Shown here in pieces: positions 13,807 through 38,561 of a stretch of DNA of 64,000 bases (position 1 is the stretch's first letter; each line of letters opens with the position of its first letter). A program made the translations under genes and the position numbers. The stretch covers positions 63,264,935 through 63,328,934 of the forward strand of contig NC_068993.1 of the NCBI RefSeq assembly GCF_001194135.2, read 5' to 3'. The notes beneath the pieces are model-generated. The model was not told the origin of the DNA. It saw only the letters and a list, made by a program, of their open reading frames with translations, and did no database searches. The stretch is from Octopus bimaculoides (lineage: Eukaryota).

Positions 13807-13873
13807 ATGAGATTGTCAATTGCGTTCGCTCTCCTTTCCCTGTCTCTGTGCCAAGCAGAAAACAATTCTTCAG
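13807..13873 (+). CDS. Cassette A exon: signal peptide MRLSIAFALLSLSLCQAENNSS
   Basis: ATG in aaaATG context, hydrophobic h-region, CQA cleavage-like motif, strong donor TCAG|gtaag; phase 1 is compatible with exon 14230. Confidence 0.8.
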
Positions 13874-14229
13874 GTAAGAAAACGTATCGCATTTTTTAAT
13901 TGCTTCAAACATATCTCATTATTAATAATATTACAGCTGACATGGAGTGAAGACTCCAGGCATTTTGGCACTGGCGCTTCAAAAGGCTGCTACACTTCCC
14001 ATACATCAACTACAAAAGGAACAGCTTTCTCAGGAATCAAGCCAACCAATACGCTGGCAGACAGGAACCGCTCCTTGTGCAGATAAAAAGATGAATGCTT
14101 GCCTGATACAGTCATGTATCCAACCACAACTTCCTGTCTAAATCTCTGACATCCACAACATGACCATCACCCCTTTATCACCAACACCACCTCATCATCT
14201 ATACTAACAAAGCAATGTTTATATTTCAG

Positions 14230-14355
14230 ATACTGGAAGAATTCTTGATGGAAGCTGGTCAAGTGAAGAAAATCTGGTGCTTACTTTTGACCAAAGAAAT
14301 AACTCTTTGAGTGCTACATTAATTATTTCATGTAGCCGTGGATACAATTTCACAG
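14230..14355 (+). CDS. Cassette A diverged avidin-like domain, exon 1 (TGRILDGSWSSEENLVLTFDQRNNSLSATLIISCSRGYNFT)
   Basis: tttcag|...acag|gtaag, phase 1-1, 126 nt, open. Same length as paralog 28118-28243; LDGSW resembles avidin LTGKW. Confidence 0.85.
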
Positions 14356-15244
14356 GTAAGTTTTAAAATTCTTTAAGCTTGATCACAAGAGAAAGGAACC
14401 AGTCTGCTATTGTTTTACTTCTGTAAAATTAGAAAGGTTTATGGAGATTATTGCTGTCACTCTTAAATGTATCTTTTAATCCTCTTTTATCTTTTACTTG
14501 TTTCAGTCATGTAGATTGTGGCTATGCTGGAGCACCACCTCGAAGAATTTTAGTCAAACACATCAATCCCAGGACTTGTTTTTAAACTTGGTGCTTATTC
14601 TATCAATGCCTTTTGCTGAACTGCTAAGTTACAGAGGTGTAAACAAACCAACACCAGCTGTCAAGTGGTGGTGATGGAGCAAATGCACACACACTCACAC
14701 ACACACACACACACACACACATGATCGGCATTTTTTCATTTTCTGCTTACCAAATCAATTCACAAGGTTTTGGTGAGCCCAAGACTAGCAGTGAGACTGA
14801 ACCTAGAACCATGTGCTTGGGAAGCAACCTACTTACCACACAGTCGTGCCTCTGTCTATGGTTAAGGTCACTGTCAACATTAATGTTTCCTGTAAAAACC
14901 TCATTCATATTCATAGAGTCAACTTTGTCGATGCTTATAGTAAAATCCATGTTAAGTCGAAAAGTAAAATCCAATAAGTGATTTACATCCATCCCCAGTG
15001 CATAACTGGTACTTACATCATCAACCCTGGCAAAACGAAAGGCAAAGTCAACCTCCGCAGAAATGAAGACTTGTTAATGCTCATAGTGAGGTTCTTGTTA
15101 ATGTTTAAAGGCCAAGATCAAAATTTGTATGAAATATGTTTGTTACTCAATAGAAGATGTTTTCATCTAAATTACATTTTATTTTATATCTACGATTTAA
15201 TGAAGCGATTTATCTGGGGCTTTTCCCCCCTTTTTCTTTTGTAG

Positions 15245-15313
15245 GTAACATTACCAACAGCAATACATTTCATCTGTATGGAGCATTCAACACCACGGCC
15301 ATGGCTGTCACAG
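15245..15313 (+). CDS. Cassette A diverged domain, exon 2 (NITNSNTFHLYGAFNTTAMAVT)
   Basis: ttgtag|...acag|gtatt, phase 1-1, 69 nt; paralog 28890-28958 has the same length (13/22 identical aa). Confidence 0.85.
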
Positions 15314-15722
15314 GTATTAACCCTTTTGTGAATATGTTTCTTATGAACTCTTATAATTTTGTTACACAAAATTATGAAGGAAGGAATTGTTTTGTATTTA
15401 TTTTAGAATAAATATTTTATTAGGATTGCATTTGTATAAAAACACCAGAGGTAGTCTCAGAGAGGTTGGCATGAAAAGGATTAAATATTTTGCCATCTAT
15501 GTCGTCAGACAATTGGAGCCTGGTACAGCTCTCCTGCTTGCCAGCTCCTGTCAAACCATCCAACCATGCGGCCATGCTGGAGCATCACCTTTAGACAAGC
15601 AAATCGACCCCAGATCTTATTCTTTGTAAGCTAGTACTTATTCTATCAGTCTCTTTTGCTGAACTGCTAAGTTATGGGGACATAAACACACCAGCATCAG
15701 TTGCCAAATGATGGCAGGGAGA

Positions 15723-15761
<39 letters not shown>

Positions 15762-16934
15762 AACAGCAGACTTAGTTCATAAGATATTTAGTTGTGTCAT
15801 CTTACATGCTTTTCATTAACAATGAAAAAATACCAGTTATATAAGTAAAACCTTATAAGTAGGGTGCATTGTCAAATCTTCAGAGATTGAATAACTCATT
15901 AGTAACCTTTAACATTTATGCTGGACTACTGACAGTGTTACAATATCAACTACCAAAACAACTGTGTTAAATTATGTGAAAGAATTAGCTTATATACTTA
16001 CAGGAAGGATGAAAGTATGTCTTATCATAGAATAGAAAAACAGTATTTACGTAGCCAATGTTTCTATTAAAAGAAGTGATATATAGCTAAAGCTATGAGG
16101 TCTCACAGATCACAGCAAGGTATCCCTATGATCTATCAGTCTTATATGTTGTTTAGCTGTTAAATGTTGTCCATTCATGCTGAATATGTCACAATCTCCA
16201 CCCACTTCCACATCACCAAGCAAAAGATAACAGCTTGACACCATCTTCCATTTTCTCCTAATGAAGAAGAGATGAAATATCGACGTATGGTAAAGTACAA
16301 GTCGTTATGTCTTCATTACTTCTGTTTTCACTCCAATCTTTTAATTTGCACTGGATCGGCTTCTGAACAATTTTAATTTTAATTTTAAGCATCACACAAT
16401 GTTTCTCTCAGACCACAACACTTATGTATGTGTGTGTGTGTGTGTAAACAGGTACACTCATAGTTGTCTTGTCTGACATAAATCAAATCTTTTCTTTGTT
16501 TCTTCATTCCAGTTTATTCTTCAAGATTGGTTTGCAATCTATTTTCTTGTTATGCAATGCTTTATTGATCAAAGGTTAAAACTTAATTCTTCAAGTTATT
16601 GTTTTTCACTCAAAGAAAAACATGACACACAATATGCAGGAATTTTCGATGGTTCTGAGAATTCTTGAAACAAATAAAATACCTGATTATTTTACTTTTT
16701 ATTTTTTTACTAAAAGAAATTTTAATATTAATTTCTTCTCCTCTACCACTTTAGTATAAAACTCAGTTTTCACTAAGTTTCAAGAAAGTAATTAATTTCA
16801 TTTTAAGTCACATGACAGTCTCTTATGACAACTGAAAATTCTGTGAAATAAATAGAATTCTCCAATAACCACGATTGATACAAGATGTTTCCTGCTTTTC
16901 AGATTTCAACAACAAAGTAGTCTCAGCATCTTGG

Positions 16935-16965
<31 letters not shown>

Positions 16966-18234
16966 GTTGTATTGTTCTTTATTTCTACCAGAATACATGA
17001 TATTTACTACAGAACAGTCAACCAGATTTTTTTTTTCTTTACTATAGAAATGGTTGTCATTTAACCTTGAATTTCAACAACAATTTAAAATGTTATCTCC
17101 AAAATTATTTTTATTTCATGTTGTATTGTATTGTTATTTATTCTTAGCAGAATACACAATATTTATCAAGGTGAATTCTGTCCTTGATTCATCATCATCA
17201 TCATCATTATCATCGTCGTCGTCATTTAACGTCCACTTTCCATGCTGGCATGGGTTGGACGATTTGACTGAGGACTGGTGAGCCAGAAGGCGGCACCAGG
17301 CTCAATCTGATCTGGCAAAGTTTCTACAGCTGGGTGCCCTTCCTAATGCCAACCACTCCAAGAGTGTAATGGGTGCTTTTACTTGCCACTGGCATTAGGG
17401 CCAGTCAGGTGGTTCTGGCAATGACCACACTCAAGAGGTTGTTTTACATGTTACCTGCATGGGAGCCAGTCTGGTGGCACTGGCAATGACCACGCTCGAA
17501 TATTGCTTTTCACGTGCCACCAGCACATGTGCCGGTAAGGCGATGCTGGCAACAATCACGTTCAAATGATGCTTTTTATGTGCCACCATGAGCCAGTCCA
17601 TGACCCTGGCAATGATCATGCTTGGATGTGCTTTTAATGTTCCACTGGCACAAGTGCGAATCAGGCGGTGCTGTCATCGGCCACATCAGCGATTTTGATT
17701 TGATTTGATTTCCAATTTAATAAATAACTGCCCCCTATTAGTTACGACGATGAGGGTCCCAGCTGATCTGATCAACGGAACAGCTTGCTCGTGAAATTAA
17801 TGTGCAAGTGGCTGAGCACTCCACAGACACATGTACCCTTAATGTGGTTCTCATGGAAACTTAGTAGGACTTAGGATGTGACAAGCCTTTAAAATACATG
17901 TACTATTTATTTTGGCCAGCTGGGTGGACTGTAACAATGCAAAATAAAGTGTCTTGCTTAAGAACACAATGTACCACTGGGAATTGAACTCACAACCTTA
18001 CAGCCATGAGCAGAATCCCCTAACCACTAAGCCATGAACCTTCACAATTCCTGTCCAATTTAATGCATTAATATTAAATTTCATTTATTTATTTAATTAT
18101 GTATTTCTTTATTCAATCCTTTGATTTTTTAAAAAAATATTTGTAATATTACCATCAGATTAATAATAATTGTCTGAGAATGACATTAGAAAAATAATTG
18201 TATGTTCATTTTTTTTTTCTGTAATTTTCTTCAG

Positions 18235-18410
18235 GACAACTCTATAAGACAAACCAAAATAAGATCTTGAAGATTACATTGATGAAGTACGATTATGCAA
18301 ACTGCACTAATTATACCCCAACAAAAATTTCTTTCCATGAACTGAAACCAAGCCAAAACATTTCTAAAAGCACAGCCACCCAGACATCTTATAACTGGTA
18401 TAATTACCTA
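18235..18410 (+). CDS. Cassette A diverged domain, exon 3 (QLYKTNQNKILKITLMKYDYANCTNYTPTKISFHELKP...YNYL)
   Basis: cttcag|...cta|gtaagt, phase 1-0, 176 nt; paralog 31829-32004 has the same length. G|QL...LKITL parallels avidin G|QC...LKTMW. Confidence 0.85.
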
Positions 18411-18526
18411 GTAAGTAATATAATGATTTTTATTTCTCTAATTATGCTGATGATTTAATAATTTGGTAATAATTCTTATAGCATGTTTTAGCAGCAGACT
18501 CAGTTTCTTCCAAGATGATGATGATG

Positions 18527-18559
<33 letters not shown>

Positions 18560-18563
<4 letters not shown>

Positions 18564-18735
18564 TATTGATAAATTTGAAGACAGAAAGTGAAAAAAGATG
18601 GCTATGGATGACTAAAAGTGATTTAAAACTGGAAACGGAGGCTCTAATCTGTGCTGCCCAAGAGCAAGCACTAAGAACAAATTACATCAAATACAGAATG
18701 GACAACACATTATTAAAAAATGGTGACATACACTG
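18560..18735 (+). mobile_element. RLE-type LINE fragment in an intron of cassette A
   Basis: EKRWLWMTKSDLKLETEALICAAQEQALRTNYIKYRMD, the conserved post-RT segment of this group. Confidence 0.75.
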
Positions 18736-18760
18736 AATTAGTTTCTGTTGTTTTCTTCAG

Positions 18761-18772
18761 AATCCCTAAAAG
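18761..18772 (+). CDS. Candidate 12-nt micro or terminal exon of cassette A (AAT CCC TAA in phase 0)
   Basis: ttttcttcag|aatccctaaaag|gtttga; positional and sequence counterpart of 32792-32801. Confidence 0.35.
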
Positions 18773-19037
18773 GTTTGACTACAGAATTGCAAATATAACA
18801 AATTCCTTATCCTTTATATAGTACCTTGCCCCCATCTGTCACCTGTGGTCATGAACTCCACTTCCAAAAGGTACCAATTTATATCTCAATATAAATATAG
18901 GGATGTGTAGCTGTGATATTGCAGCACGTGAATGGCTGTGCTCAGTGTGTGTGTATACAGAGATTAGAGTTTGTTTTTAAAATATGAGTAAAACTAAGAA
19001 TGTCCGTGTGTCTCAGTGAGTAACTATAACAATTCAG

Positions 19038-19153
19038 GTTTAATAAAAATAATGTGGAGAATTCCAATGTTTGCCAAAGCTAATCTATTTTCTTCTGATT
19101 CTTTTTCATATTTTTGGCCGATATGTGGTCATTTGAGAATTTCAAACAAGAAG
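19038..19153 (+). other. Conserved candidate alternative first exon upstream of avidin domain A (GC donor)
   Basis: Colinear with 33035-33138; ends GAAG|gcaagt versus GAAG|gtaagt in B; phase 1 matches exon 19497. Confidence 0.45.
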
Positions 19154-19291
19154 GCAAGTATGACAATAATTCCTGAGAATAATTATTTTCTCCATTCAAC
19201 CACTCTCTTTTTTTCACCCTTAATTTCTTACACTCTCTATTTATCTTTGTATGTGTCTGTCTCTCTTTATCTGTATGTCCTTTTATAAGTC

Positions 19292-19338
<47 letters not shown>

Positions 19339-19496
19339 CTATTTCAATTCCTTTTGATCACTCTCCCTATTTTTTATTTTTTAAAATACCAGTTATGATG
19401 TTACATTGAAACAGGTTTGTCTGCCATACATGTCCTGCAATCACTAATCAAATTACAACATTAATCTTTGATGAGTATATTTATCTGTCATTACAG

Positions 19497-19583
19497 ATGC
19501 CAACTGCAGCCTGGAAGGTACTTGGTATAACGATCTCGGTTCTACAATGGTCGTAAAACAAAATGAGGATGGTTTACTGGAAG
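19497..19583 (+). CDS. Avidin domain A, exon 1 (ANCSLEGTWYNDLGSTMVVKQNEDGLLE)
   Basis: ttacag|...gaag|gtgag, phase 1-1; near-match to chicken avidin CSLTGKWTNDLGSNMTI. Confidence 0.92.
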
Positions 19584-20220
19584 GTGAGAAGAATATATTT
19601 TCAAAATATCAAAATGTAGATTATTTCAGTAGTCATTCAAATTTGTATCAGACCATTTTTTAAAACTTATGTTATTTTAAAAGGATTTGTTTGTTTTCGC
19701 TCTTGTTTCAATATGTTTTGTGTTGGGCACAAATTTGTAAACTCATCCTCAGTCAAATCTAGCTTTGGTTCTTCCTGTTAAATTCTGGGACAACATTCCC
19801 ATAAGTTGGTATATCAGGCATCACAGAGTGAGGTTCTACATATTTCTTCAGCCTTCTCAATGCAGTCACTAAACCCTCTTCAAATAAACATCCTAATCAA
19901 ATTAAGAAAAAAAGGTAAAAAAAAAAAAAAGGAAAGGGTCACATACTTTGGATTCCAAAAGAATAATGTAATTTGATTGGTTACAGGCCTGACTTGAACA
20001 TTTCACTGACCACAGACAGAGCTAACAATGCAAAATATATGTATTTTATTTCTAAAAGCGTACCCTGAATTGATACTAAGCCTTCAGTTCCCTCTACAAG
20101 GGTTAATGGTGTACAATCTGTGTGCTGAAACAGTCTATGTTATTGAACATAACATCTGCATAAGCGTTAAGGTCTGCAGACCATTAAGGACACTAATTTG
20201 GTTATTTTATTTCATTAAAG

Positions 20221-20361
20221 GTCAATTCCGCACTTCTGTTGAACGTTTCAATGGTTCATCTGGAGGTTTTAAAGCTAATATTTATGGTGCCATCAGCCCT
20301 TATTCTGTCTTCAGTTTTGGTCTTGTTTGGAATGAAGGAACTTCAATCTCCAGCTTTGTTG
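20221..20361 (+). CDS. Avidin domain A, exon 2 (QFRTSVERFNG...FSFGLVWNEGTSISSFV)
   Basis: ttaaag|...gttg|gtgag, phase 1-1; parallels avidin GTYITAV...FGFTVNWKFSESTTVFT. Confidence 0.92.
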
Positions 20362-20577
20362 GTGAGTAGCAATAACACACCACATATTTGATTTATGTAT
20401 GTTCACATGTATGCTTATGTGCGTGTGTGTGTGTGTGTGTGTTCAATTCATCATGTATATTTAATTCCTCACATCTTACAGAAAGCCAAATTGCGTCCAT
20501 CCATTATTTCTCTTGCTGGAACTTCACAGATAGAGACTCTAAGTTTCATGTTTTACTAATCCTCAAGGAACCAAATA

Positions 20578-21340
20578 CAAGGTTGAGTCAAAAAGTAATG
20601 ATCCATTTTGTTTAGGACAGGTATAATTAACAACACAGGAACATGTATCATACATCAAAATGAAGCTGGTCCTCTGTGGATTACATCCCTACTTCTCAAC
20701 ATAGTCACTGTTTCTCTCAATAACAATGTTCCACCTTCGAATGAGAGCATGCATCCCTGCCTCGTAAGATTCTGTTGACTGTTCTTTGAGCCATTTCTTC
20801 TCTACAGTTTTCACTTCCTCGTCACTGGAATATTTTCCTTTCAAACCCTCTTTCATGGGGCCAAAGAGATGATAGTCTGAAGGCGCTAAATCTGGCGAGT
20901 ATGGAGGATGTCATAAAGTTGCCCACCCGAATGAGGTGATTGTCTCCCTTGTCCTGATGCCTGTGTGTGGTTGAGCATTGTCATGCAGAAGGAGGACATT
21001 GTCGATTGGCAAGTTGGGTCTTACTCATCGAATTCTTGCTCTGAGCCTCGTCAGGGTCTCACTGTAAGTCCCAGAGTTTACTGTTTTTCCTTTTGGCAAG
21101 AAATCGACCAGAATGACACCTTGAGCATCCTAAAAGACAGTCGCCATGATTTCTCCAGCTGACTTTGCATCTTGAATTTTTACAGTGACGGTGACATAGA
21201 GTGGCGCCATTCCAATGACTGCCTCTTTGATTCCAGTTCATAATGATGAACCCATATTTTATCACCTGTTACGAGCCTTCGAAAAAAGGTGTTGTCTCTA
21301 TGACTTTGTTCGAAACTTGACAAATAGTGACAGTAATTTT
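20578..21340 (-). mobile_element. Mariner (DD34D) transposase remnant, 3' half, intronic
   Basis: Minus strand has RRLVTGDKIWVHHYE, LLLHDNAQPH and HPPYSPDLAPSDYHLF. TA followed by a TIR-like caaggttgagtcaaaaagt at 20576-20596. Stops and frameshifts. Confidence 0.9.
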
Positions 21341-21838
21341 TGTGAGTGTGTGTATTTAAATACAAGTAAATTTTCTTGTTGAAGGCATGAAGCTTAGTGG
21401 TCAGCTCACTATTGTAAGGTCAAGAGTTTGGTTACCAGCAGCATGTTGTCTCCTTGAGCAAGACACTTTATTTCCTGTTGCTCCAGTCCACTCAATTAGC
21501 AATAAGGAGTAGTACCTGTATTTCAAAGCATCAGTCTCATCACATTCTGGTACATGCTGAATCTCCCTGAGAACTATGTTAAGAGTATGTGTGTCTGTGG
21601 AGTACTCAGCCACTTGCACATTAATTTCATGAGCAGGCTGTCCTATTGATAAGATCAACTGGAAGACTCAATATTGTAACTGATGGAGTTCCCATAGCGT
21701 AGTCTTTAAACATGTTTGTTGCCGAAATGTTTTTGAAATTTCTCAGAGTGGAAAGGCTTTTTGTTAGCAACTTTCAAGCTCATGTCTGAATATACAGATG
21801 CACCCATTCATGCATGTTTTTTTTTGTCTCTTCTCCAG

Positions 21839-21964
21839 GTCAGTGTATCCCTTCATCGAACAATGCCACCTTCTTGAAAACTCAGTGGACAATGCTTGTG
21901 GGACAGGAGACCTTTGATACCAGCTGGAAAGCCTTTTACAATGGAATGAACAATTTCTACAAAG
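21839..21964 (+). CDS. Avidin domain A, exon 3 (QCIPSSNNATFLKTQWTMLVGQETFDTSWKAFYNGMNNFYK)
   Basis: ctccag|...aaag|gtgag, phase 1-1; parallels avidin GQC...LKTMW...WKATRVGINIF. Confidence 0.92.
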
Positions 21965-22639
21965 GTGAGATGCATATGATGTTACCTGCAAGGATGGGTG
22001 GAGAGATGGATAAGTACGTGAATAGGGGGGTGGATTTATGGGTAGGTGAAGGGATTAATGTATGGATCATTAGGTGAATGGATTATTAGCAGGTGGGATG
22101 AGAGGAAGAATGGATGCATGAGTAGTGAACAGATTGACGGTTGGGAGTTGTGTGGGTGGGTAGGAGAAATGTGGTTAAAAGGGTAGATGATTGGATGATT
22201 GATTGGTGGGAGTGATGAGTGGAGGGATGAATGCATTGAATGATGGTTGAATGAATGGACAAGTGGTATGGTGCCTGGTTAGATTGACATTTTGACAGAT
22301 GGTTTATTGAGTGGATGGTTAGATAAATATCACATGGATGGATTGGTGGTTATACACCTGGTTGGTAAGGAGATGATCAAATAGACAAATCTAGTCATCC
22401 ATACAGGTATTCATGCATGGCCTACTCCCCATTACCCCTGCTGGATGTGCAAAGCCATGCAGATCCCGCCTCAAGAACCTGCTCTGCCCTCTCATCTCCT
22501 CTCATAAAGATGACTCCCACCATCACCCCCTGAGATTGTTGTCCTGAGAACTACATGGCGACTGCAATAGCGCAGATGCCATGCAAAAAGCAACTAGTAT
22601 GCATTGTAAAGTGTGTGTTTGTGTATATATATATATATA

Positions 22640-22960
22640 TGCTGAGAGACCCCCTTCGGTCATGACTGACCATGGGATTGCACCTAGAAAGTTACCTTCC
22701 CAGGCACAAGTCCAGGCAAGGTCGTTTATGGAAGACCAGCAGTCGCCAATGCATACTGGTCTCCCATCTCCATGCCACCAGTGTTATCCAAGGGAAAGGC
22801 AAAGGGGCCGATGCAGCTTGACACCTGTGACGTTGCAATTCATTTCTACAGCTGAGTGAACTGGAGCAACGTGAAATAAAGTGTCTTGCTCATGAACACA
22901 ACATGCAGCCCAGCCCAGGATTTGAACTCACAACCTCACGATCGTAAGCTCGATGCTCTA
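22640..22960 (-). mobile_element. tRNA-derived SINE, second family (plus-strand copy at ~50240-50600)
   Basis: Reverse complement of tagagc...gagttcaaatcc...cttgagcaagacactttatttcacgttgctccagttcactcagctgtagaaatg... Confidence 0.7.
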
Positions 22961-23003
22961 ANNNNNNNNNNNNNNNNNNNNNNNNNNNNNNNNNNNNNNN
23001 NNN

Positions 23004-23035
<32 letters not shown>

Positions 23036-24021: not shown

Positions 24022-24038
24022 AGTTAATAGAGGAATAA
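24022..24038 (+). CDS. Avidin A terminal exon (E-LIEE*)
   Basis: ttccag|ag tta ata gag gaa TAA; paralog 38545-38561 shares gaggaataaaacagaagaa; AATAAA at 24206-24211. Confidence 0.75.
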
Positions 24039-28117: not shown

Positions 28118-28243
28118 ATCCTGAAGGAAGTTTCGCAAGGATCTGGTCAAGTGAGGAAGGTATAGGAATCGAATTCAAAGGACCCAATCATGCACTGATG
28201 GCTGAAGTTGTTTTTCCGTGTGGACGACAATACAACGTTAAGG
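28118..28243 (+). CDS. Cassette B diverged avidin-like domain, exon 1 (PEGSFARIWSSEEGIGIEFKGPNHALMAEVVFPCGRQYNVK)
   Basis: ttacag|...aagg|gtaag, phase 1-1, 126 nt; WSSEE, C and YN are shared with 14230-14355. Confidence 0.85.
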
Positions 28244-28889: not shown

Positions 28890-28958
28890 GTGCCATGACC
28901 AACAACCATACATTCTACCTGTATGGAGCAAACCAGACCACTGCCATTGGAGTAACAG
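28890..28958 (+). CDS. Cassette B diverged domain, exon 2 (AMTNNHTFYLYGANQTTAIGVT)
   Basis: ttgtag|...acag|gtatc, phase 1-1, 69 nt. Confidence 0.85.
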
Positions 28959-30215
28959 GTATCAGGCATTTTGTTTTTCGCTTTTTTCCGTAATTCCAAG
29001 AGAAGAATATAGCTGCTCTTTTAAAGACTAGCCTTCACACAAATGCCAAAAAAAGGAATGGCATTAAAAAAAAAGAAGGAAAAACTGAAATGTGTGTGTG
29101 TGTGTTTTACTCTTTTACTTGTTTCAGTCTTTTGACTGTGGCCATGCTGGAGCACCGCCTTTATGTGTGTGTGTAACAAATGCAAATGTAAAACATAAGA
29201 AATGATTAAGTTTTAATATACAATACGAGCAAATGCTGGAATGCAATGTGTGTGTGTGTATATATATATATGCGTGTATGTATATATATATATGCGTGTA
29301 TGTATATATATATATGCGTGTATGTATATATATATATGGTTTAGTATTACACTTATCCTGTTTATTTCACCAGTTTACAGATGGTGGAGTAGCATTTAGG
29401 TAAGACTTGACAACAACCACTTGTAGGTCAAGCAAACATTAGGGACATAATCATTGGATTCTTCAAAACTAGCCATCTATGATGTTACGGTCATTTCTAC
29501 AGAGATTACTGCCAGCACTGATTTTTTTGCTGCAATATTTCATATCCAGACATCAGATGTAAACAAACAATGAGACCGAAGACAAAGGTCTCTATAATTT
29601 CTGTAGAAATAACCTTAACAAAATAATGTAAAGAGCACTGCTAACACAGTAGAACACGGTGTTAACTTACAAAACCATTTAATATACTTTATGGTTGCAT
29701 AACGAAATACCAAGTGCTTGGAGGTCATTAAAGTCATCTGTGAGTTCTAAATACTCACAGGCTCTACATGAAAAATAAGAATTCACTTTTTCTCTGAGTA
29801 TAAACTATAGCACAGATTCAGAAAATATTCTGTATTCTGGCCAGAAAAAAAAAGAAGCTATTTAAGGAATGACAAATAATCAAATATCTTGTGGGATGAC
29901 AGCATAATTTCATTGTCGAAATTATGCTGCAGACAAGTAATTTATATTGATCATACTTATTGGAAAAATTCAATTTATATCAGCTGCTTATAACTGGTGG
30001 TTTTTTTTTTCATTAAACACAAAATTAATTAATTGCCATTTTTCTGGGAATTCATTATATTCAAACTTGATTTGATAAATTATAGTAAAATATACCCAAA
30101 TTGTCTAATAATGTCAAATATTCTCAGATAGTTCAACAAGAAATTATACATAAAAATAATTAGTTTAATGTGTGTGTGTGTGTATGAATATGAGTGTGTG
30201 TATACACACACACAT

Positions 30216-30248
<33 letters not shown>

Positions 30249-31828
30249 CACATACATATATATCCATGTGTGTATGTGTATGTATGTATGTATGTATGTA
30301 TGTATGTATATATATATATATATATATGTATGTATAGGTTACCTGTGATTTTGTATGTGATATTCTAGGGTAAATATAACTGAATCACTTTATAAAAATC
30401 AGATAAATTTGTATGCCCCAAAGAAATAAGTTCTGCTACTTTAGTCTGGGAGCCTTGTATGTTTAGGAGAGGCATGGGCAAACTTTTTCCAGAAGCAGAC
30501 CACATGATACATGGGTTCATCATGTGGCAGGCCACACTGCTAGAAAAACTGGAGGCAATTTCTTTCAGAAAGTGTGATGGGCCATAGGTCTCTGACAAAT
30601 GTTTTAGGAAATATATTCATTCAACCCTCACTGTGATTAATATGAAGGATACATTTAAGGCAGCAAGCGGGCAGAAACATAAGCACAATGGGTAAAATGC
30701 TTGGTGGCATTTTGTCCTTCTTTGCACTCTCTAGTCAACTTGGTCAACTTTGACTCTCATCATTTTGGGGTCAATAGAATAAGTACCAGTTGAGTACTGG
30801 GGTCAATGTAATCAGCTTACCCCCTCTCCCAAAATTACTGGCGTTGTGCCAAAATTTGAAATCAATATGCTTTGTGCATCTACTTATAAAACAAATGCTC
30901 CAACAGTTACACTCAGGAGTATAGAATTTTTTAAAATGATATTTGTTTATAAAGTGTATTGTTTATGTGTTTCAATTAATTTTGATAACATCAATAAATT
31001 TAGAGGGATTTAATTAAGTAATTTTCTCATTATTTCTCTGATGTCTGCAAATGTAATTTAGCAAAAGTACCTAAAATGAAATTATTACAGAAAGCTTAAA
31101 TTCAGAGACAAACACTTTAAAATGGTTAGTTTTGTTTACCGGAACCAGAGATGGTCTCAGAAAAGTTAATATCAAATTGTAATGAGTAAAGGCAATAATT
31201 ATCAGGTATGGGGTGTAATTAAATATGAATCTAATTTGGGGGTGGGGTGGGGTTTACCTGGCAAAGATCTGGGTGGACAGCATAACGAATGCGATCAATA
31301 GTTATAATAGATTAATGAGAATTTTACCTCCTGTTTACAAATGTCATTGTGTACTAGTAAAATGAATAGTCACCAATATTTATAGAATATTATAGCTTAC
31401 AGCTACAAACCTACTCTGAAAGCTTCAAAAAATAAGTTCCATTATGAAGTCAAAGAGAATCAGAAGCCTTTTGGAGGACAACATTTAAAAGTTTTGTGGA
31501 AATGTAAAAATCAAAAAACAAACATCTGACAACAGATATTTCTATTTGAAAAAAATAAAAAGTTAAAAAAAAAAACTACTGGACCGTATTGTGATAAATA
31601 TTGTGTATTCTGCTAAAAATAAGGAAGAATAAAAGACTCTAGATCAAGATATGGAATCAAATGATTTCTGGGATGACATTTCAACAAAGTTGCTGAAATC
31701 TAAAAATCAGAAGACATCTTTTATGAGACTGTCACATTAAGTTGACAACATGCTATCAATAAATATTGTCTTAAAATAAAAAAAATACTGACAATTTTAA
31801 TTTTATTTTATTTTGCAATTTTCTTTAG

Positions 31829-32004
31829 GACTTTTCTTCATAACAAAGAACGGTCAACTCTTGAAGATCACACTGGTCAAGTATGATTATGCAAACTGCA
31901 GTGAATATACTCCAGCAAAAATATCTTCACATGAATTGAAACCAACTCAGACACTTTCTTACAACTCTAACCTCTGGATGTATCATAATTATGACGATTA
32001 TATA
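31829..32004 (+). CDS. Cassette B diverged domain, exon 3 (LFFITKNGQLLKITLVKYDYANCSEYTPAKISSHELKP...DDYI)
   Basis: ctttag|...ata|gtaagt, phase 1-0, 176 nt. Confidence 0.85.
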
Positions 32005-32123
32005 GTAAGTTATCTAATAATTAGCATTTGATTTCAATCATTATGTTAACGAGTTAATAATTTGCTGATAATATTTCTGTATCTCTTTTACGTGAGTTTA
32101 GCTGCACACTTGATTTTCTTCAA

Positions 32124-32154
<31 letters not shown>

Positions 32155-32791
32155 GTTCCAAATTTTGTCACGAGGGGGATGAGTTGATTACATCAACCCC
32201 CAGTATGCAACTGGTACTAATTTTATCAACCCCAAAAGGATGAAAGGCAAAGTCAACCTTGGCGGAATTTGAACTCAGAACGTAATGATGGGCTAAATAC
32301 TGCTAAGCATACTAACAATTCTGCGAGCTCACTGCCTTTATAATAGTAGTAGTAGTAGTAATAATAATAATAATAATAATAATAATATGCCTGGTTTTGA
32401 CTGGAAGATTCGCCTACTACCTTTTATGGCATTTATCCCAGTTTGACCAAAAAACATTTCACGTGCCTGAAGCCAGCAGCTTACAGATTGTATTTTAATG
32501 GTTGTCATGAAGTTGACCAAATATGCACTTATACCAGTTTTGAAAGCAAACTCCTCATATATAACAGAAGACACTTGCCCAAGGTACCACATAGTGGGAC
32601 TGAACCCGGAACCATGTGGTTGGGAAGCAAGCTTCTTACCACACAGCCACCACACCTGTGCCTATAGTTGTGTAGCCATGTGTTAATGTCCGTGTAATAT
32701 AGAATACTATTGTAGTGTCACCATATGTAAATGTTTATATAACATAGAATTATAGTTTTGGTTGTGAGGAAAGGACATCTGTGTTTTATAG

Positions 32792-32801
32792 GGCTCTAAA
32801 G
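32792..32801 (+). CDS. Candidate 10-nt linker micro-exon (GSK + G), phase 0 to 1
   Basis: gtgttttatag|GGC TCT AAA G|gtgtgt. It has the length class needed to join 32004 to 35452; read-through without the donor gives GSKGV*. Confidence 0.4.
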
Positions 32802-33034
32802 GTGTGTAACCCTTTATATAAAATATCAATGTAACATAAAACTATATTGATGTTTAACCAAGATGAAATGTCTGTGTAACCATTTATGTATGTCTATGGA
32901 ATAATGAACTCTATGGCTGTGGAGCCAAATATCAATGTCCATAATATAGAATTCTATAGCTATGTAGTAAAGTAACTTCTGAGAGTTCCAAACCCCAAAA
33001 ATGGAACCATGGTATTCATAAAAATTCCAGTCAG

Positions 33035-33138
33035 ATAAAGTTGTTAGAATTTTACTCTTTACCAACGTTAATCTACTCTCTTCTGATTCCTTTTCATAAT
33101 GTTGGCTGGATTCTGGGACTTCCGAGCTTATAATGAAG
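33035..33138 (+). other. Conserved candidate alternative first exon upstream of avidin domain B
   Basis: Colinear with 19038-19153; ATG at 33099 gives MLAGFWDFRAYNE, then GAAG|gtaagt (phase 1). Confidence 0.45.
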
Positions 33139-33286
33139 GTAAGTTGGGCAATAAATTAAAGAATGGAGGTGGTGGAGAGGATGTTGAAATAATTATCTTC
33201 ACATTCTCACCCCTCCTCTATCATTTGCTTCTCTTTCTCTCTTTCCTTTTATATACTCATATATATGTATGTATATTCATATATAG

Positions 33287-33319
33287 CCGACGAAGGGAAA
33301 TAACCCTGAAATCCGGATC
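33287..33319 (+). ncRNA. Hammerhead-like core at the head of a ~210-nt repeat (second copy 33662-33694)
   Basis: CCGACGA-AGGG(aaataa)CCCT-GAA-ATCCGGAT-C: variant core (U4C), 4-bp stem II, 8-nt palindromic stem III, AUC triplet; stem I is weak. Confidence 0.45.
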
Positions 33320-35451
33320 CGTTCGTGCTGCAGATGTTGGTGAGAGGGATAACTACCCTTGGCAAACAGGACACAGTCGTGTGTCGATAAGCCAGCTGGA
33401 GGAGATGTCCTCCTGGGGCTAAAAGCAACAGTAACATCCACCCCTAGGGGTCAGCCACACTTAAGTGGCAATATACTACACTTTATATATTANNNNNNNN
33501 NNNNNNNNNNNNNNNNNNNNNNNNNNNNNNNNNNNNNNNNNNNNNNNNNNNNNNNNNNNNNNNNNNNNNNNNNNNNNNNNNNNNNNNNNNNNNNNNNNNN
33601 NNNNNNNNNNNNNNNNNNNNNNNNNNNNNNNNNNNNNNNNNNNNNNNNNNNNNNNNNATAGCCGACGAAGGGAAATAACCCTGAAATCCGGATCCGTTCG
33701 TGCTGCAGATGTTGGTGAGAGGGATAACTACCCTTGGCAAACAGGACACAGTCGTGTGTCGATAAGCCAGCTGGAGGAGATGTCCTCCTGGGGCTAAAAG
33801 CAACAGTAACATCCACCCCTAGGGGTCAGCCACACTTAAGTGGCAATATACTACACTTTATATATTATATATATATGTATATATAGCGAGAGAGAGAGGT
33901 GGGGAGGGCAGGGACAGATATTTATTTATATATATATATACTCTTACTCTTTTACACATTTCAGTCATTTGACTGCCACCATGCTGGAGCACTGCCTTTA
34001 GTCGAAGAAATCGATCCCAGGACTTATTCTTTCTAAGCCTAGCACTTACTCTATCGGTTTCTTAGGTCGAACCACTAAGTTATGGGGATGTAAACACACC
34101 AACATCAGTTGGCAAGCGATAGTGGAGGGACAAACACAGACACACAAACATATACATATATATACGACTGGTTTCTTTCAGTTTCCATCTACCAAATCCT
34201 CTCACAAGGCTTTGGTCAACCCAAGGTGCCATGCAGTGGGGCTGAACCCAGAATCATGTGGTGGGTAAGCAAGCTTCTTACCAACCACACAGCCACTGCT
34301 GCACACACACACACACAGTCTAATTCAGAATTGCACCCAAAACTCAAAATTTGAAAAGCAATAGTGGAACCAGTTTTTATGTTGGAAGAAAAAAAATCTT
34401 ATTTTGTACTATATAGTATAATACTTCTGCTCTTATGATTCTAATATATTCTTCAGTCTTATAAAACAAATCTTCTGTGTTTTTCCATCTTATTTCTTGC
34501 CGTATATATTCAACCACTTTTAATCACCCACTATACTTTCTACCTATATATATATATATCATCATCGTTTAACGTCCGCTTTCCATGCTAGCATGGGTTG
34601 GACGATTTGACTGAGGACTGGTGAAACCGGATGGCAACACCAGGCTCCAATCTGATTTGGCAGAGTTTCTACAGCTGGATGCCCTTCCTAACGCCAACAA
34701 CTCAGAGAGTGTAGTGGGTGCTTTTACGTGTCACCCGCACAAAGGCCAGTCAGGCGGTACTGGCAACGGCCATGCCCAAAATGGTGTATTTTATGTGCCA
34801 CCCGCACAAATCCTAAGGAGTGAAACTATGGTTTATATGTTGCATCTGTTTCTCACCTGTCTATCACACACATGCTTGGTTCACAGTTTGTTTTCAACCT
34901 CAGTCTTTGATTAAGGTAAGAAACAGTTTGCAAGCCATAACACCACAACACATAGAAGACCACTTATAACTGGTAGTTCATATATTACAGGTGTCATTGA
35001 CAGAAATTGTGTGATTTATAAACACACTAATCTGGGACGATACATCATAACCTGGTGTAATCTATAAAGATAGTACGTCTATGGTTGGTACCACATCATA
35101 GCTTGGTGTGGTCTATGAATATACCAAATAATAATGCTACATCATGGTCAGATTTGGTCTACAAACATACCATTCTATGATGCTGAGTTACTTGTCTGGT
35201 GTATTATCTCCCATACAGAGAGAAGCAATTAAAAAGTAGCATTCCAATAGTTGAAATGTGTTTCTATGCCACAACACACAATGAATCTACTCATAGCCAG
35301 TGGCTTATTTTTCTCACTTAGCTAGACCAGGGATTACATCTGAAACCCCATTAATCTTACTACATCTTAGCCTAATGGCTTATCTGTTGAACTTGCCCTT
35401 TAATCCTGATCAACATTAATCTTTGATGGATACTTTCATCTGTCATTACAG

Positions 35452-35538
35452 CGTCTAGTTGTAATCTGAACGGAACTTGGTACAATGAGCTGGGCTCTTC
35501 AATGACTATAACACAAAAGGATGATGGTTCACTGGAAG
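35452..35538 (+). CDS. Avidin domain B, exon 1 (SSCNLNGTWYNELGSSMTITQKDDGSLE)
   Basis: ttacag|...gaag|gtaag, phase 1-1, 87 nt, same length as in A. Confidence 0.92.
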
Positions 35539-35749
35539 GTAAGAAAAATCCATTTTTCAATATAATATAACATAGAATATTATTGTATTATTGTTTACAT
35601 TATCTAAATTCAGTACCAGACCATTTAACTCATGAATTTATTGTATTATTTGAAATGTTTTTGTCACAATGTTTTTGAAAAACAGTAAAAGCAGTGTCAT
35701 CAAAGTATTCATAATTTCATTAATTTTGGTTAATTTTATTTCATTGAAG

Positions 35750-35887
35750 GTCAATATAACACTGCTGTTGAACGTAGCAATGGTACGTCTGGAGGCGGTA
35801 AAGCAGATCTTCATGGCACCATCAGTTATTCAGTCTTTAGTTTTGGTGTTGTTTGGAATGAAGGATCTTCCATTACTGTCTTCAGTG
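35750..35887 (+). CDS. Avidin domain B, exon 2 (QYNTAVERSNG...FSFGVVWNEGSSITVFS)
   Basis: ttgaag|...agtg|gtgag, phase 1-1, 138 nt (one codon shorter than A). Confidence 0.92.
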
Positions 35888-36233
35888 GTGAGTAGTAGTA
35901 ACAAAAGTATACACGTATATGTATGTATGTTATACACACATACATATATACATAAATAAATAAACAAATAAATAACAACAGATGGATAATGTGTCAATAC
36001 CCTACAACTGTTTCCAATGAATTTTTAATTGATTAACAGAGATATTACATCATTAGAAAAAACAGTTACATCAAGTGAATACATGAAACACAACATTCAA
36101 AAGTATTCAGAGCCAACGGGATGTGGATATGCATATANNNNNNNNNNNNNNNNNNNNNNNNNNNNNNNNNNNNNNNNNNNNNNNNNNNNNNNNNNNNNNN
36201 NNNNNNNNNNNNNNNNNNNNNNNNNNNNNNNNN

Positions 36234-36273
<40 letters not shown>

Positions 36274-37820
36274 ACAAGGGAACAATGGAGTTGTTTTATC
36301 ACATTTTTTTTCAGTATCATATGGGTGACAAATCATATATGTTGGTAAACATAGAAAAGAGCAATAATAATGAATATATTTGTATACAGTGCTCAGGTGC
36401 ACTACAACTCATCAGAAAAAGTAGGCAAGAGTGTATGAACAGTACATAGAATAATGCACCAGAAGTGAACAGTGAATGAGTTGTTTAAAAAGAAAGTGGT
36501 GGGAGCATTGTATCATATTTGATTATATAATCAAAGAAGCAGAGTCATCTATTCATGACCTTGCTGAACAAATAAATATATTTGTTTACCAGAGTTATGA
36601 GTTGGGGACTAAGGCTTTCACTTGTTTCCAAATAAGTAATATTTCCCCCATGGCTGAACATGTTTCTTGTAGATGATTGGAAATGTCAAACCTTGCTTGT
36701 TTGACGGTAATACTAATTTGTGACCATCATGTGATGTCTAGACAAGGGTACACACAAACACACACAAATGTACACATGTATATATTAGCTGATATAAATA
36801 GAAGCAAACAATGTAATTTTTGCATGGCAGAGAGAGCAAGAATCCTACAAAACTCACTTGACTGGCAACCTTTTAAACTCCAGGAAAGAAGTGTTTAGTC
36901 AATGCCCACATCTAAAACGTTTCTTACTATAAGCTTGGAATTCCCTGTTTGTTGAATACGTTCACAGCAGCTTTTTGGAATATCACCATGGCCAGAACCA
37001 ATGTAAGTGTGGTAGCCCCCTCCTGCACAAACAAATATATTTTTTTGCTTACAAAACTAACTGATCATAACATTTCTTCCCCAAGCTGTAGAGAGGTTAT
37101 GCATCTTCGGCCATTTGAGTCTGGTAAGTCACCTATTTGGCTAAGCACTTTATAGGTGCGAAACCAATGGACACTCTATGACAACTTCCTACCAAAATAT
37201 ATTATTGTTCTAATGTTTTAGGGTATGCTTTTCTTTTTTCGGATATATGAACTACTGACGATAAATATATATATATACACACAACAGCCTTCTTTCAGTT
37301 TCTGTCTTACTAAATACGATCAAAAAATCTTCCTTAGTGGAAGGAAGACATATGCCCAAGGTGCTGTGCAGTGGACTGAACCTAAGACCACATAGTTGGA
37401 GAACAAGCTTCTTAACCACACAACCATACCTGCACCTATGTATATAGGCTGATATTAAACCATGTACTTTGGGTGTAGCTTTGATTTCATGTCAGTGTAT
37501 TAAATAATAATTATGAATTTGTCGATATTATATGTGTGTATGCATGTATATGAATGTGTATGTGTGAACAAGTTGAGTTGGTTTACTATAAATTTGAGTA
37601 AACAGAGACAAAATACCAAATATGCATAAGTAGTGTGTTTGTGTGTGTATGCACATGTTTGTAAGTAAATATTTGTTGTTAAGATGTCTTTATTAATTGT
37701 CACATAATGTGTTTTGTTGACATTTTACTTTATTAAATGCCTAATGCCGACCCTTAGAATTAACTTATGGTATGTCTACACACATATATATATATATGTG
37801 TGTGTGTTTGTGTTCTGCAG

Positions 37821-37946
37821 GTCAATGTATCCCTTCATCAAGCAATGGCATTGAGTTGAAAGCCCACTGGTCATTGGTTGCAGCCCAAAGATCTGTTGAG
37901 ATCAGCTGGAAAGCATTTTACACAGGAATGGACAATTTCTACAAAG
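37821..37946 (+). CDS. Avidin domain B, exon 3 (QCIPSSSNGIELKAHWSLVAAQRSVEISWKAFYTGMDNFYK)
   Basis: ctgcag|...aaag|gtgag, phase 1-1, 126 nt. Confidence 0.92.
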
Positions 37947-38544
37947 GTGAGAGATCTTAGATGTTACCTGTAAATGATGGGTGGATGAATGGATGGATAA
38001 CCGGATGTTGACAGAAATGATAAGTGAAAAGCTTTGAGGATTAATGTATAGCTGGGTGAATGAGGGAATAACAGAATGAATGGGTAGGTAGAAGGGTGGA
38101 TGGATTAGTAGTACTTGGGTGCTTTTTATGAGGCACCAGCACCAAATGCTCTTTATGTAGCATTGGCACAGGTGCTTCTTATGTGGCACTGGCATGGATG
38201 CTCTGTATATATACTCTGAGTGATTGGCGTTAGGAAGGGCATCCAGCTGTAGAAACTCTGCCAAATCAGATTGGAGCCTGGTGTTGCCATCCGGTTTCAC
38301 CAGTCCTCAGTCAAATCGTCCAACCCATGCCAGCATGGAAAGCGGACGTTAAACGATGATGATGATGATGATGATATATATATCATCATTATCATCATAA
38401 TCGTCATCATTGTTTAAAATCTATTTTCCATGCTGGTGTGTGTGTGTATGTGTGTATATGCATACTTATATACAAGTGTGTATGTATCTATAAAATTCTG
38501 ATTGCCATCGTCTGACCTTAATTTGTGATATTCCTTTATTTCAG

Positions 38545-38561
38545 ATTCTAAAGAGGAATAA
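38545..38561 (+). CDS. Avidin B terminal exon (D-SKEE*)
   Basis: tttcag|at tct aaa gag gaa TAA; paralog of 24022-24038. Confidence 0.75.

What the first reader, a model, noticed from the sequence alone, without database searches (positions are those of the whole stretch)
13807..38561. Tandemly duplicated two-module avidin locus (diverged barrel + canonical avidin, twice) hidden in small exons
Seen: two colinear cassettes with matching exon sizes and phases (126/69/176 nt, then 87/141 or 138/126/17 nt). All exons are open with canonical splice sites, although the introns carry different TEs. Manual identity A vs B is ~60% (69/115) for the avidin domains and ~45% (54/121) for the diverged domains. 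Established: avidin-family proteins (chicken avidin/AVRs, streptavidin, tamavidin, xenavidin, zebavidin) are secreted biotin-sequestering beta-barrels, often antimicrobial or egg-protective. Inference: an old duplication kept under selection, possibly a cephalopod biotin-withholding (nutritional immunity) or egg/secretion system with a dedicated non-binding partner module. I cannot tell from here whether it has been described.
Basis: partly seen in the sequence, partly recalled or inferred. Interest (0 to 1): 0.85.

Follow-up and report, generated by a model that had tools for sequence, protein, structure and literature searches.

The report
Octopus double-barrel avidin gene, internally duplicated
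This stretch of Octopus bimaculoides DNA holds an uncharacterised gene for a secreted, probably biotin-binding protein in which a degenerate avidin-shaped barrel and a true avidin barrel sit on one chain, and this pair occurs twice, much like the single-chain avidins that protein engineers have built.

Summary
On the + strand between 13807 (ATG) and 38561 (TAA) lie two colinear exon cassettes, 126/69/176 nt then 87/141 (or 138)/126/17 nt. Both avidin modules match Pfam Avidin over its full length (76.5 and 89.9 bits) and keep nearly all biotin-contact residues. The "diverged" modules have no detectable sequence homology to avidin, but AlphaFold models fold them as eight-stranded barrels. The best structural matches are avidins, and for a whole cassette they are engineered single-chain dimeric streptavidins.

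New points:
- The window is Octopus bimaculoides.
- There is only one signal-peptide exon. Cassette B has none, so this is one transcription unit with an internal tandem duplication, not two independent genes.
- Argonauta hians encodes all four barrels in one 536-aa ORF, and the same join is in frame here (533 aa).
- The link exons lack a canonical AG acceptor at the homologous position. This is unresolved.
- All three assembly gaps are intronic.

dN/dS is 0.34-0.48. No literature describes a cephalopod avidin. I rate this a new variant of a known family, of moderate to high interest.

The parts
13807..13873 (+). Exon 1: start codon and signal peptide (MRLSIAFALLSLSLCQA|ENNSS). It ends in phase 1 and is the only signal exon in the locus.
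   Evidence: It is 100% identical to the N-terminus of UniRef A0A0L8HYN0. Its donor is G|GTAAGA.
14230..14355 (+). Diverged barrel A, exon 1 (126 nt, phase 1-1).
   Evidence: AG/GT splice sites. Paralogous to 28118-28243.
15245..15313 (+). Diverged barrel A, exon 2 (69 nt, phase 1-1).
18235..18410 (+). Diverged barrel A, exon 3 plus the start of the linker (176 nt, phase 1-0, GTAAGT donor).
   Evidence: The 2015 gene model reads through this donor to a stop (P0003).
19117..19153 (+). Link exon A (ADMWSFENFKQE). Its boundaries are set by homology. It has a TG in place of an AG acceptor and a GC donor. A canonical alternative is 19138-19153 (16 nt).
   Evidence: Homologous to Argonauta 'IHMYETNEPPQE'.
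19497..19583 (+). Avidin A, exon 1 (87 nt, phase 1-1).
20221..20361 (+). Avidin A, exon 2 (141 nt).
21839..21964 (+). Avidin A, exon 3 (126 nt, ends in phase 1).
24022..24038 (+). Terminal exon A (17 nt, gives ...NNFYKELIEE*). It is followed by a 3' UTR paralogous to that of cassette B. It is skipped in the four-barrel isoform.
28118..28243 (+). Diverged barrel B, exon 1 (126 nt, phase 1-1). It has no start codon or signal exon of its own.
   Evidence: The join 21964->28118 gives 'NFYK-D-PEGSF', matching Argonauta 'TFYR-E-SERGF'.
28890..28958 (+). Diverged barrel B, exon 2 (69 nt).
31829..32004 (+). Diverged barrel B, exon 3 (176 nt, phase 1-0).
   Evidence: The O. vulgaris orthologous exon has the same length, with dN/dS 0.34.
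33105..33138 (+). Link exon B (AGFWDFRAYNE, 34 nt). It has a TG in place of an AG acceptor. Annotations start a separate gene at the ATG at 33099. A canonical alternative is 33127-33138 used with a donor at 32008.
35452..35538 (+). Avidin B, exon 1 (87 nt).
35750..35887 (+). Avidin B, exon 2 (138 nt).
37821..37946 (+). Avidin B, exon 3 (126 nt).
38545..38561 (+). Terminal exon B (17 nt, gives ...DNFYKDSKEE*).
   Evidence: 100% identical to UniRef A0A0L8HYT7.

Best explanation
The region is one Octopus bimaculoides transcription unit encoding secreted avidin-family glycoprotein(s).

Gene structure:
- The ancestral gene was: signal exon, a three-exon degenerate barrel, a link exon, a three-exon avidin barrel, and a 17-nt terminal exon.
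- Everything from just upstream of the first barrel exon through the 3' UTR was then duplicated in tandem inside the gene.
- All the relevant junctions are phase 1, so three products are in frame: signal+A (281 aa), signal+B (279 aa) and signal+A+B (533 aa, four barrels). Argonauta is annotated with the four-barrel form.

Proposed mechanism (inferred):
- Each avidin barrel binds one biotin with a canonical pocket.
- The degenerate barrel has lost the pocket. It packs against the avidin barrel of its cassette in the way a second subunit packs in an avidin or streptavidin dimer.
- One chain would therefore give a ready-made pseudo-dimer, or with both cassettes a pseudo-tetramer with two live sites, with no need for homo-oligomerisation.
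- The likely use is extracellular biotin sequestration.
For: Shown by tool results:
- Species and existing fragment annotations.
- Pfam Avidin over the full profile, 76.5 and 89.9 bits against a cutoff of 24.
- PDB sequence hits to avidin, AVR4, zebavidin and xenavidin.
- The biotin contacts N12, L14, S16, Y33, T35, V37, W70, S75, F79, W97, W110 and N/D118, plus Cys4 and Cys83, are kept in the four octopod avidin modules. Exceptions are Y33F in A, T35S in Argonauta module 2 and T77S/A in two modules.
- The cassette-A AlphaFold model has pLDDT 72.7 and pTM 0.75, with two eight-stranded barrels and a disordered linker of about 27 residues.
- Its best PDB matches are single-chain dimeric streptavidins 6s50 and 6s4q, covering both barrels (E 8.6e-11 to 6.9e-10, TM 0.65-0.71, 276-278 columns). 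Single avidins follow (TMt 0.78-0.87).
- The diverged barrel modelled alone gives a top 50 made up entirely of avidins.
- There is one signal exon only, and no homology upstream of cassette B.
- The Argonauta 536-aa protein is colinear with the window's ORF, 47% identical, with the same 16 exons.
- All three isoform ORFs are open.
- dN/dS is 0.34-0.48, and exon lengths are identical in O. vulgaris.
- There are 17 N-glycosylation sequons and one Cys pair per barrel, including in the avidin barrels, as expected for a secretory-pathway protein.
Against: - No transcript evidence was available.
- The link exons have no AG at the position homologous to Argonauta's canonical acceptor.
- The O. vulgaris and 2015 O. 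bimaculoides annotations break the locus at these points.
- Terminal exon A is intact, so the four-barrel form may be minor or absent in Octopus.
- The diverged barrel's relation to avidin rests on AlphaFold models built from 2-6 sequences. hhalign gives 0.1% probability.
- A full-length (pseudo-tetramer) model could not be run.
- Biotin binding is predicted, not measured.
Confidence: 0.72

Rival explanations
1. The locus is split into several independent genes, as current Octopus annotations have it. These would be a secreted diverged-barrel protein (signal+divA, ending by read-through after 18410), an avidinA+divB protein starting at the ATG in link exon A, and an avidin B protein starting at the ATG at 33099. 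The avidin-containing products would have no signal peptide.
For: - No AG acceptor is available for the link exons in frame, and an in-frame TGA lies just upstream.
- Gene models P0001, P0002 and P0003, and the 230-aa plus 105-aa O. vulgaris models.
- The 150 nt upstream of link B are 92% conserved between the Octopus species, against roughly 69-91% (three of four near 69-77%) in other intron stretches. That region could be a promoter.
Against: - The ATG positions differ between link A and link B, and there is none in Argonauta link 2, which has a canonical acceptor and is internal.
- A cytosolic high-affinity avidin would lack its disulfide and glycans and would sequester the cell's own biotin.
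- The sequons and Cys pairs in the avidin barrels fit secretion.
- Argonauta is annotated with one ORF.
- In-frame canonical micro-exon alternatives exist.
- A branch-point-like motif and a pyrimidine tract precede the TG, as at a real 3' splice site.
Confidence: 0.2
2. The diverged module is not an avidin relative. It is an unrelated beta-sandwich, for example the Reeler domain suggested by the UniProt name, fused upstream of the avidin domain.
For: - UniRef calls A0A0L8HYN0 a 'Reelin domain-containing protein'.
- There is no sequence-level similarity to avidin.
- The intron positions of the diverged module (126/69/176) differ from those of the avidin module (87/141/126).
Against: - Pfam Reeler does not match any of the four modules, even at E <= 10.
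- Both AlphaFold models give an eight-stranded meander whose best PDB matches are all avidins. The two-barrel model matches single-chain streptavidin dimers better than any single domain.
Confidence: 0.15
3. The avidin-like barrels do not sequester biotin. They would serve as oligomerisation or structural modules, as in sea-urchin fibropellins.
For: - Fibropellin is a precedent for a non-binding avidin-like domain in a marine invertebrate extracellular protein (cited in PMC10336842).
- Copy A carries Y33F.
Against: Nearly the whole biotin-contact set, including all four Trp, is conserved in four modules from two genera under purifying selection.
Confidence: 0.1

Closest known systems
Vertebrate avidins (chicken avidin, AVR4, zebavidin, xenavidin; Pfam PF01382)
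   Same: - Full-length Pfam match.
- About 30-33% identity and TM 0.80-0.87 to the solved structures.
- Conserved biotin contacts and the Cys4-Cys83 pair.
- A secretion signal.
   Different: - The vertebrate proteins are single-barrel subunits that form homotetramers.
- Here each avidin barrel is preceded on the same chain by a degenerate barrel, and the pair occurs twice.
- This is a mollusc (cephalopod) gene, and the search found no described counterpart.
Engineered single-chain dimeric streptavidin (PDB 6s50, 6s4q) and dual-chain or single-chain avidins (PDB 2c4i; PMC3105096)
   Same: - Two avidin-type barrels on one chain, joined by a flexible linker of about 26-30 residues.
- These are the best structural matches to the cassette model, covering both barrels.
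- 2c4i is the top PDB sequence hit.
- The engineered proteins form pseudo-tetramers.
   Different: - They are man-made, both barrels bind ligand, and some are circularly permuted.
- In the octopus protein the first barrel of each pair is degenerate and has a different exon structure.
- Pseudo-tetramer formation by the octopus protein is inferred, not shown.
[quoted passage not shown]
   Same: [quoted passage not shown]
   Different: - In fibropellin the non-binding domain is recognisable as avidin by sequence (a statement from outside knowledge, not tested here) and serves oligomerisation.
- Here the non-binding barrel is unrecognisable by sequence and is paired with a barrel that keeps the biotin pocket.
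- There are no EGF repeats.
Argonauta hians GAB1601784.1 ('uncharacterized protein LOC115218491')
   Same: - An ortholog with signal-div-link-avidin-div-link-avidin in one 536-aa ORF.
- The same 16 coding exons.
- 47% identity.
   Different: - No relic of terminal exon A lies between its cassettes.
- Its link exon 2 has a canonical AG acceptor.
- It is itself uncharacterised.

Membership tests
Avidin family (PF01382): modules avidin A and avidin B | Match to the family HMM above the curated cutoff, over the whole domain | tested here: met
   76.5 and 89.9 bits against a cutoff of 24. Profile positions 1-115 of 116 are matched.
Avidin family (PF01382): modules avidin A and avidin B | Eight-stranded antiparallel beta-barrel superposable on solved avidins | tested here: met
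   The AlphaFold cassette model has eight strands in residues 144-253. Foldseek gives TMt 0.78-0.87 and rmsd mostly 1.9-2.7 A (one NMR entry 4.4 A) to avidin, zebavidin, xenavidin and AVR4. This is a predicted structure, not an experimental one.
Avidin family (PF01382): modules avidin A and avidin B | Biotin-contact residues (chicken numbering N12, L14, S16, Y33, T35, V37, W70, S75, T77, F79, W97, W110, N118) and the Cys4-Cys83 pair | tested here: met
   All are conserved in O. bimaculoides A and B and in Argonauta 1 and 2, except Y33F in A, T35S in Argonauta 2, T77S/A in two modules and N118D in B (D as in streptavidin). The residue list comes from established avidin structures.
Avidin family (PF01382): modules avidin A and avidin B | High-affinity biotin binding | not testable with these tools
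   Needs recombinant protein and HABA, ITC or a fluorescence assay.
Avidin family (PF01382): modules avidin A and avidin B | Homo-oligomeric quaternary structure (tetramer or dimer) | not testable with these tools
   The prediction is that an intrachain partner barrel takes this role.
Avidin family: diverged modules div A and div B | Detectable sequence homology (family HMM or profile-profile comparison) | tested here: not met
   No Pfam hit at E <= 10 for any of the four modules. hhalign against an avidin alignment gives 0.1% probability. A PDB profile search finds only chance hits.
Avidin family: diverged modules div A and div B | Avidin-type eight-stranded barrel fold | tested here: inconclusive
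   - Module alone: pLDDT 55, Foldseek top 50 all avidins, TM 0.48-0.61 (mostly 0.54-0.61), E 6e-3 to 0.1.
- Within the cassette model: pLDDT about 63-86, eight strands, and both barrels align to single-chain streptavidin dimers at E about 1e-10.
- The result is consistent, but the alignments behind the models are shallow (2-6 sequences).
Avidin family: diverged modules div A and div B | Biotin-contact residues | tested here: not met
   Only one Trp (the W10 equivalent) is invariant in the four modules. The W-x-N-x-L-G-S motif reads W-S-S-E-E-N/G-L/I.
Reeler domain (PF02014), suggested by the UniProt name of A0A0L8HYN0 | Match to the Reeler HMM | tested here: not met
   No hit at E <= 10 for any of the four diverged modules. 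The PROSITE profile behind the UniProt name could not be run.
Natural counterpart of single-chain or dual-chain avidins | Two avidin-fold barrels on one chain, packed like subunits of an avidin or streptavidin dimer | tested here: inconclusive
   The cassette model has pTM 0.75 and TM 0.65-0.71 over 276-278 columns to 6s50 and 6s4q. This is a prediction only, and which dimer interface is mimicked was not determined.

The most novel reading that the evidence does not exclude
Octopods carry a natural single-chain pseudo-oligomeric avidin. Dead barrels would serve as built-in partner subunits for live biotin-binding barrels. A shared signal exon and uniform phase-1 junctions would let the gene produce A-only, B-only and four-barrel A+B isoforms. 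The link exons would be spliced through conserved non-AG (TG) 3' splice sites.
Probability: 0.3. Interest if true: 0.72.

Novelty: new variant of a known kind. Interest (0 to 1): 0.58.

Why it matters
- All characterised biotin-binding avidins, to my knowledge, are single-barrel subunits that must oligomerise. Single-chain versions with chosen numbers of live sites were made by protein engineers with considerable effort. A natural chain that pairs a degenerate barrel with a live one, twice, would show how evolution reached the same design. It would also offer a new scaffold with defined valency.
- As far as the searched literature shows, it would be the first avidin described from a cephalopod, or from any mollusc. 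It opens the question of biotin withholding in octopus eggs, mucus or secretions.
- The current annotations of two Octopus genomes fragment this gene. The cause, link exons without AG acceptors, is itself a small unsolved splicing problem conserved across genera.

Tried and rejected
- **Direct splicing of the 176-nt exon to avidin exon 1.** It is out of frame (phase 0 against phase 1) and hits a stop. This led to the link exons.
- **A signal or start exon for cassette B.** I searched by hydrophobic-ORF scan, tblastn and blastn and found none.
- **A first scan for a terminal exon after avidin A.** It failed because the search range was too short. The exon was later found at 24022-24038 by similarity to B's 3' end.
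- **Sequence homology of the diverged module to avidin or anything else.** Pfam, hhalign, a PDB profile search, and an HMMER search of 1.84 billion representatives all gave nothing. The last found only this protein and the Argonauta ortholog.
- **The three word-indexed protein searches.** They returned only three octopod fragment models, so distribution beyond octopods is untested.
- **Full-length four-barrel AlphaFold runs.** Cassette A was modelled instead.
- **Literature searches.** Searches for cephalopod or mollusc avidins and for LOC115218491 found nothing relevant.
- **Pseudogene.** Rejected because the frames are open, exon lengths are identical in three genomes, and dN/dS is below 0.5.


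Full report
**1. What is in the sequence**

The window is Octopus bimaculoides. Spliced translations are 100% identical to UniRef A0A0L8HYT7 and A0A0L8HYN0.

tblastn with chicken avidin and streptavidin finds two sets of three + strand exons. A self-comparison by tblastx finds a second set of three paralogous exons upstream of each. Their splice sites are canonical, and all junctions are phase 1 except the 3' end of the 176-nt exon, which is phase 0. The finding's start, 13807, is the ATG of a typical signal-peptide exon (MRLSIAFALLSLSLCQA|EN...). Its end, 38561, is the last base of a TAA.

**2. Assembly gaps (tested first, as asked)**

All three gaps lie in introns:
- 22962-23003 lies between avidin A exon 3 and terminal exon A;
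- 33493-33657 lies between link exon B and avidin B exon 1;
- 36138-36233 lies between avidin B exons 2 and 3.

The gap-free orthologous loci of Argonauta hians (L001) and Octopus vulgaris (L002) have no extra exon at these places. Their exon lengths are 176/34/87/138/126/17 for cassette B. The reconstructed ORFs stay in frame across the gaps. The middle gap is flanked by 210 bp repeated at 100% identity on both sides, which is a scaffolding artefact.

**3. The avidin modules**

Both match Pfam Avidin end to end, at 76.5 and 89.9 bits against a cutoff of 24. They hit avidin, AVR4, zebavidin and xenavidin among solved structures.

In an alignment with chicken avidin and core streptavidin, the residues known to contact biotin are conserved in both octopus modules and both Argonauta modules. 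These are N12, L14, S16, Y33, T35, V37, W70, S75, T77, F79, W97, W110 and N118, together with the Cys4-Cys83 pair. The only notable change in the window is Y33F in copy A. Biotin binding is therefore strongly predicted, though not shown.

**4. The diverged modules**

No sequence method links them to anything:
- Pfam finds nothing at E <= 10, including the Reeler family that the UniProt name suggests.
- hhalign against an avidin alignment gives 0.1% probability.
- A profile search of PDB sequences gives only chance hits.
- An HMMER search of 1.84 billion representative proteins finds only this protein and one Argonauta protein.

Structure prediction does link them to avidin:
- A model of the module alone is low-confidence (pLDDT 55). 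Even so, its 50 best Foldseek matches in the PDB are all avidin-family proteins (TM mostly 0.54-0.61).
- A model of the whole cassette A, built from a six-row alignment, has pLDDT 72.7 and pTM 0.75. It shows two eight-stranded barrels joined by a disordered linker of about 27 residues.
- The best matches of that model are the engineered single-chain dimeric streptavidins 6s50 and 6s4q, with both barrels aligned (E about 1e-10, TM 0.65-0.71, 276-278 columns). They rank ahead of every single-domain avidin.

The module keeps only one of avidin's four tryptophans and none of the N-x-L-G-S motif, so it has no avidin-type biotin pocket.

Its exon structure (126/69/176) differs from that of the avidin module (87/141/126). 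Common ancestry is therefore plausible but unproven. "Avidin-shaped barrel" is the claim I can support.

**5. Gene structure**

The 176-nt exon ends in phase 0 and avidin exon 1 starts in phase 1, so they cannot be joined directly.

The Argonauta protein GAB1601784.1 resolves this (536 aa). It reads signal, div1, link, avidin1, div2, link, avidin2 in one ORF of 16 coding exons. Homologous link exons exist here at 19117-19153 and 33105-33138. The O. vulgaris model P0002 starts in the latter.

Joining avidin A exon 3 to diverged B exon 1 is in frame and matches the Argonauta junction. The resulting 1602-nt ORF (533 aa) is colinear with the Argonauta protein and 47% identical to it.

Cassette B has no signal or start exon. 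Paralogy with cassette A stops about 25 nt upstream of its first exon.

Cassette A does keep an intact 17-nt terminal exon (24022-24038, giving ...ELIEE*), with a 3' UTR paralogous to B's. Argonauta has lost it.

The history I infer is an internal tandem duplication of the segment from the first barrel exon through the 3' UTR, downstream of a single signal exon. Because the junctions are all phase 1, three products are in frame: signal+A (281 aa), signal+B (279 aa) and signal+A+B (533 aa). Which of them are made is unknown.

**6. Selection and age**

- dN/dS between A and B is 0.36 for the avidin modules and 0.48 for the diverged modules, with dS 0.66-0.85.
- Between O. bimaculoides and O. vulgaris, dN/dS is 0.34 for diverged B exon 3 and 0.37 for avidin B, with dS 0.21 and no indels.
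- Diverged barrel B has no start codon of its own yet is under constraint. It must therefore be translated from an upstream exon. This supports a shared transcription unit.
- Applying the four-point condition to the identities pairs A with Argonauta cassette 1 and B with cassette 2, for both module types. The duplication therefore predates the Octopus-Argonauta split.

**7. The unresolved point**

At the position where Argonauta link exon 2 has a canonical TAG| acceptor, the other copies read as follows:

| Link exon | Sequence at the acceptor position |
|---|---|
| O. bimaculoides link A | TTG\| |
| O. bimaculoides link B | TTG\| |
| O. vulgaris link B | TTG\| |
| Argonauta link 1 | TTG\|, used as the acceptor by the deposited model |

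- An in-frame TGA just upstream excludes any upstream AG.
- A branch-point-like CTAAT or TTAAT and a long pyrimidine tract precede the site.
- The 150 nt upstream of link B are 92% conserved between the Octopus species, against roughly 69-91% in other intron stretches (three of four near 69-77%).
- Link A also has a GC donor.
- In-frame canonical alternatives exist: a 16-nt micro-exon for A, and a 12-nt micro-exon with a weak GTTATC donor for B. Together they give a 520-aa product.
- The third option is that translation starts at ATGs inside the link exons, as current annotations assume. This would give avidins with no signal peptide. It fits poorly with the non-conserved ATG positions, the absence of an ATG in Argonauta link 2, and the disulfide pair and glycosylation sequons in the avidin barrels.

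Only transcript data can settle this.

**8. Mechanism proposed**

Shown by the analyses:
- a secretion signal;
- two barrels per cassette (predicted);
- a conserved biotin pocket in the second barrel only;
- purifying selection.

Inferred:
- The degenerate barrel packs on the avidin barrel as a neighbouring subunit does in avidin or streptavidin. One chain would then form a pseudo-dimer, and the A+B isoform a pseudo-tetramer with two live sites.
- The most conserved stretch of the degenerate barrel is strand 7, the following loop and strand 8 (K..L..Y.Y.NC...P.K.S.HEL). From outside knowledge, these are the elements that build subunit interfaces in avidins. This fits a partner role.
- Function would be extracellular biotin sequestration. 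The tissue and biological purpose are unknown.

**9. Comparison with what is known, and novelty**

The avidin barrels are members of the avidin family. The architecture has no described natural counterpart that I could find. The closest matches are man-made single-chain or dual-chain (strept)avidins and, more loosely, fibropellins. No paper in the searchable library mentions a cephalopod or mollusc avidin. Databases hold only fragment models and an "uncharacterized protein".

I rate it a new variant of a known kind. It is real, under selection and worth an experiment, but it is not a new category.

Noticed in passing
window 44635-45111 (-): An intronless 158-aa ORF with a CS domain (Pfam PF04969, E 9.8e-14). 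It looks like a NudC-domain protein. It could be a retrogene or a single-exon gene downstream of the avidin gene.
   Followed up: partly
window 33283-33492 and 33658-33867: The 210 bp on each side of the assembly gap 33493-33657 are 100% identical. This is probably an unmerged overlap from scaffolding, so the intron is likely about 375 bp shorter than written.
   Followed up: yes
window 19117, 33105; L001 about 14331 and 24001; L002 10007: Link exons with TG where a canonical AG acceptor is expected. The TG is conserved in two Octopus species and in one of the two Argonauta copies. Link A also has a GC donor (19154).
   Followed up: partly
window 32955-33104 against L002 9857-10006: The 150 nt upstream of link exon B are 92% identical between O. 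bimaculoides and O. vulgaris. Three of the four other intron stretches compared are 69-77% identical, and one (before avidin B exon 3) is 91%. The region could hold splicing signals or a promoter.
   Followed up: partly
window 13617-13737; 39171-39440: An (ATC)n microsatellite of about 40 copies lies 70 nt upstream of the start codon. A 144-bp unit repeated 1.9 times lies downstream of the gene.
   Followed up: no
window 12205-12350, 14731-14844, 17437-17555, 32593-32647, 34122-34250, 34717-34779: Short interspersed repeats are shared between the introns and flanks of the two cassettes, in both orientations.
   Followed up: no
UniRef A0A0L8HYN0 (window 13807-18458): The database name 'Reelin domain-containing protein' is not reproduced by Pfam Reeler. 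That gene model ends by reading through the GTAAGT donor at 18410 into the intron (...VSNIMIFISLIMLMI*).
   Followed up: yes
L002 1-9711 and 10001-18525; L001 30347-35142: The O. vulgaris annotation splits the orthologous locus into a 230-aa and a 105-aa model at link exon B. The 105-aa model also drops most of avidin exon 2. In Argonauta a 324-aa gene without any Pfam domain follows the avidin gene.
   Followed up: partly
window 40509-41027 (-): A 172-aa ORF without any Pfam match, just downstream of the gene. It may belong to a transposable element.
   Followed up: no
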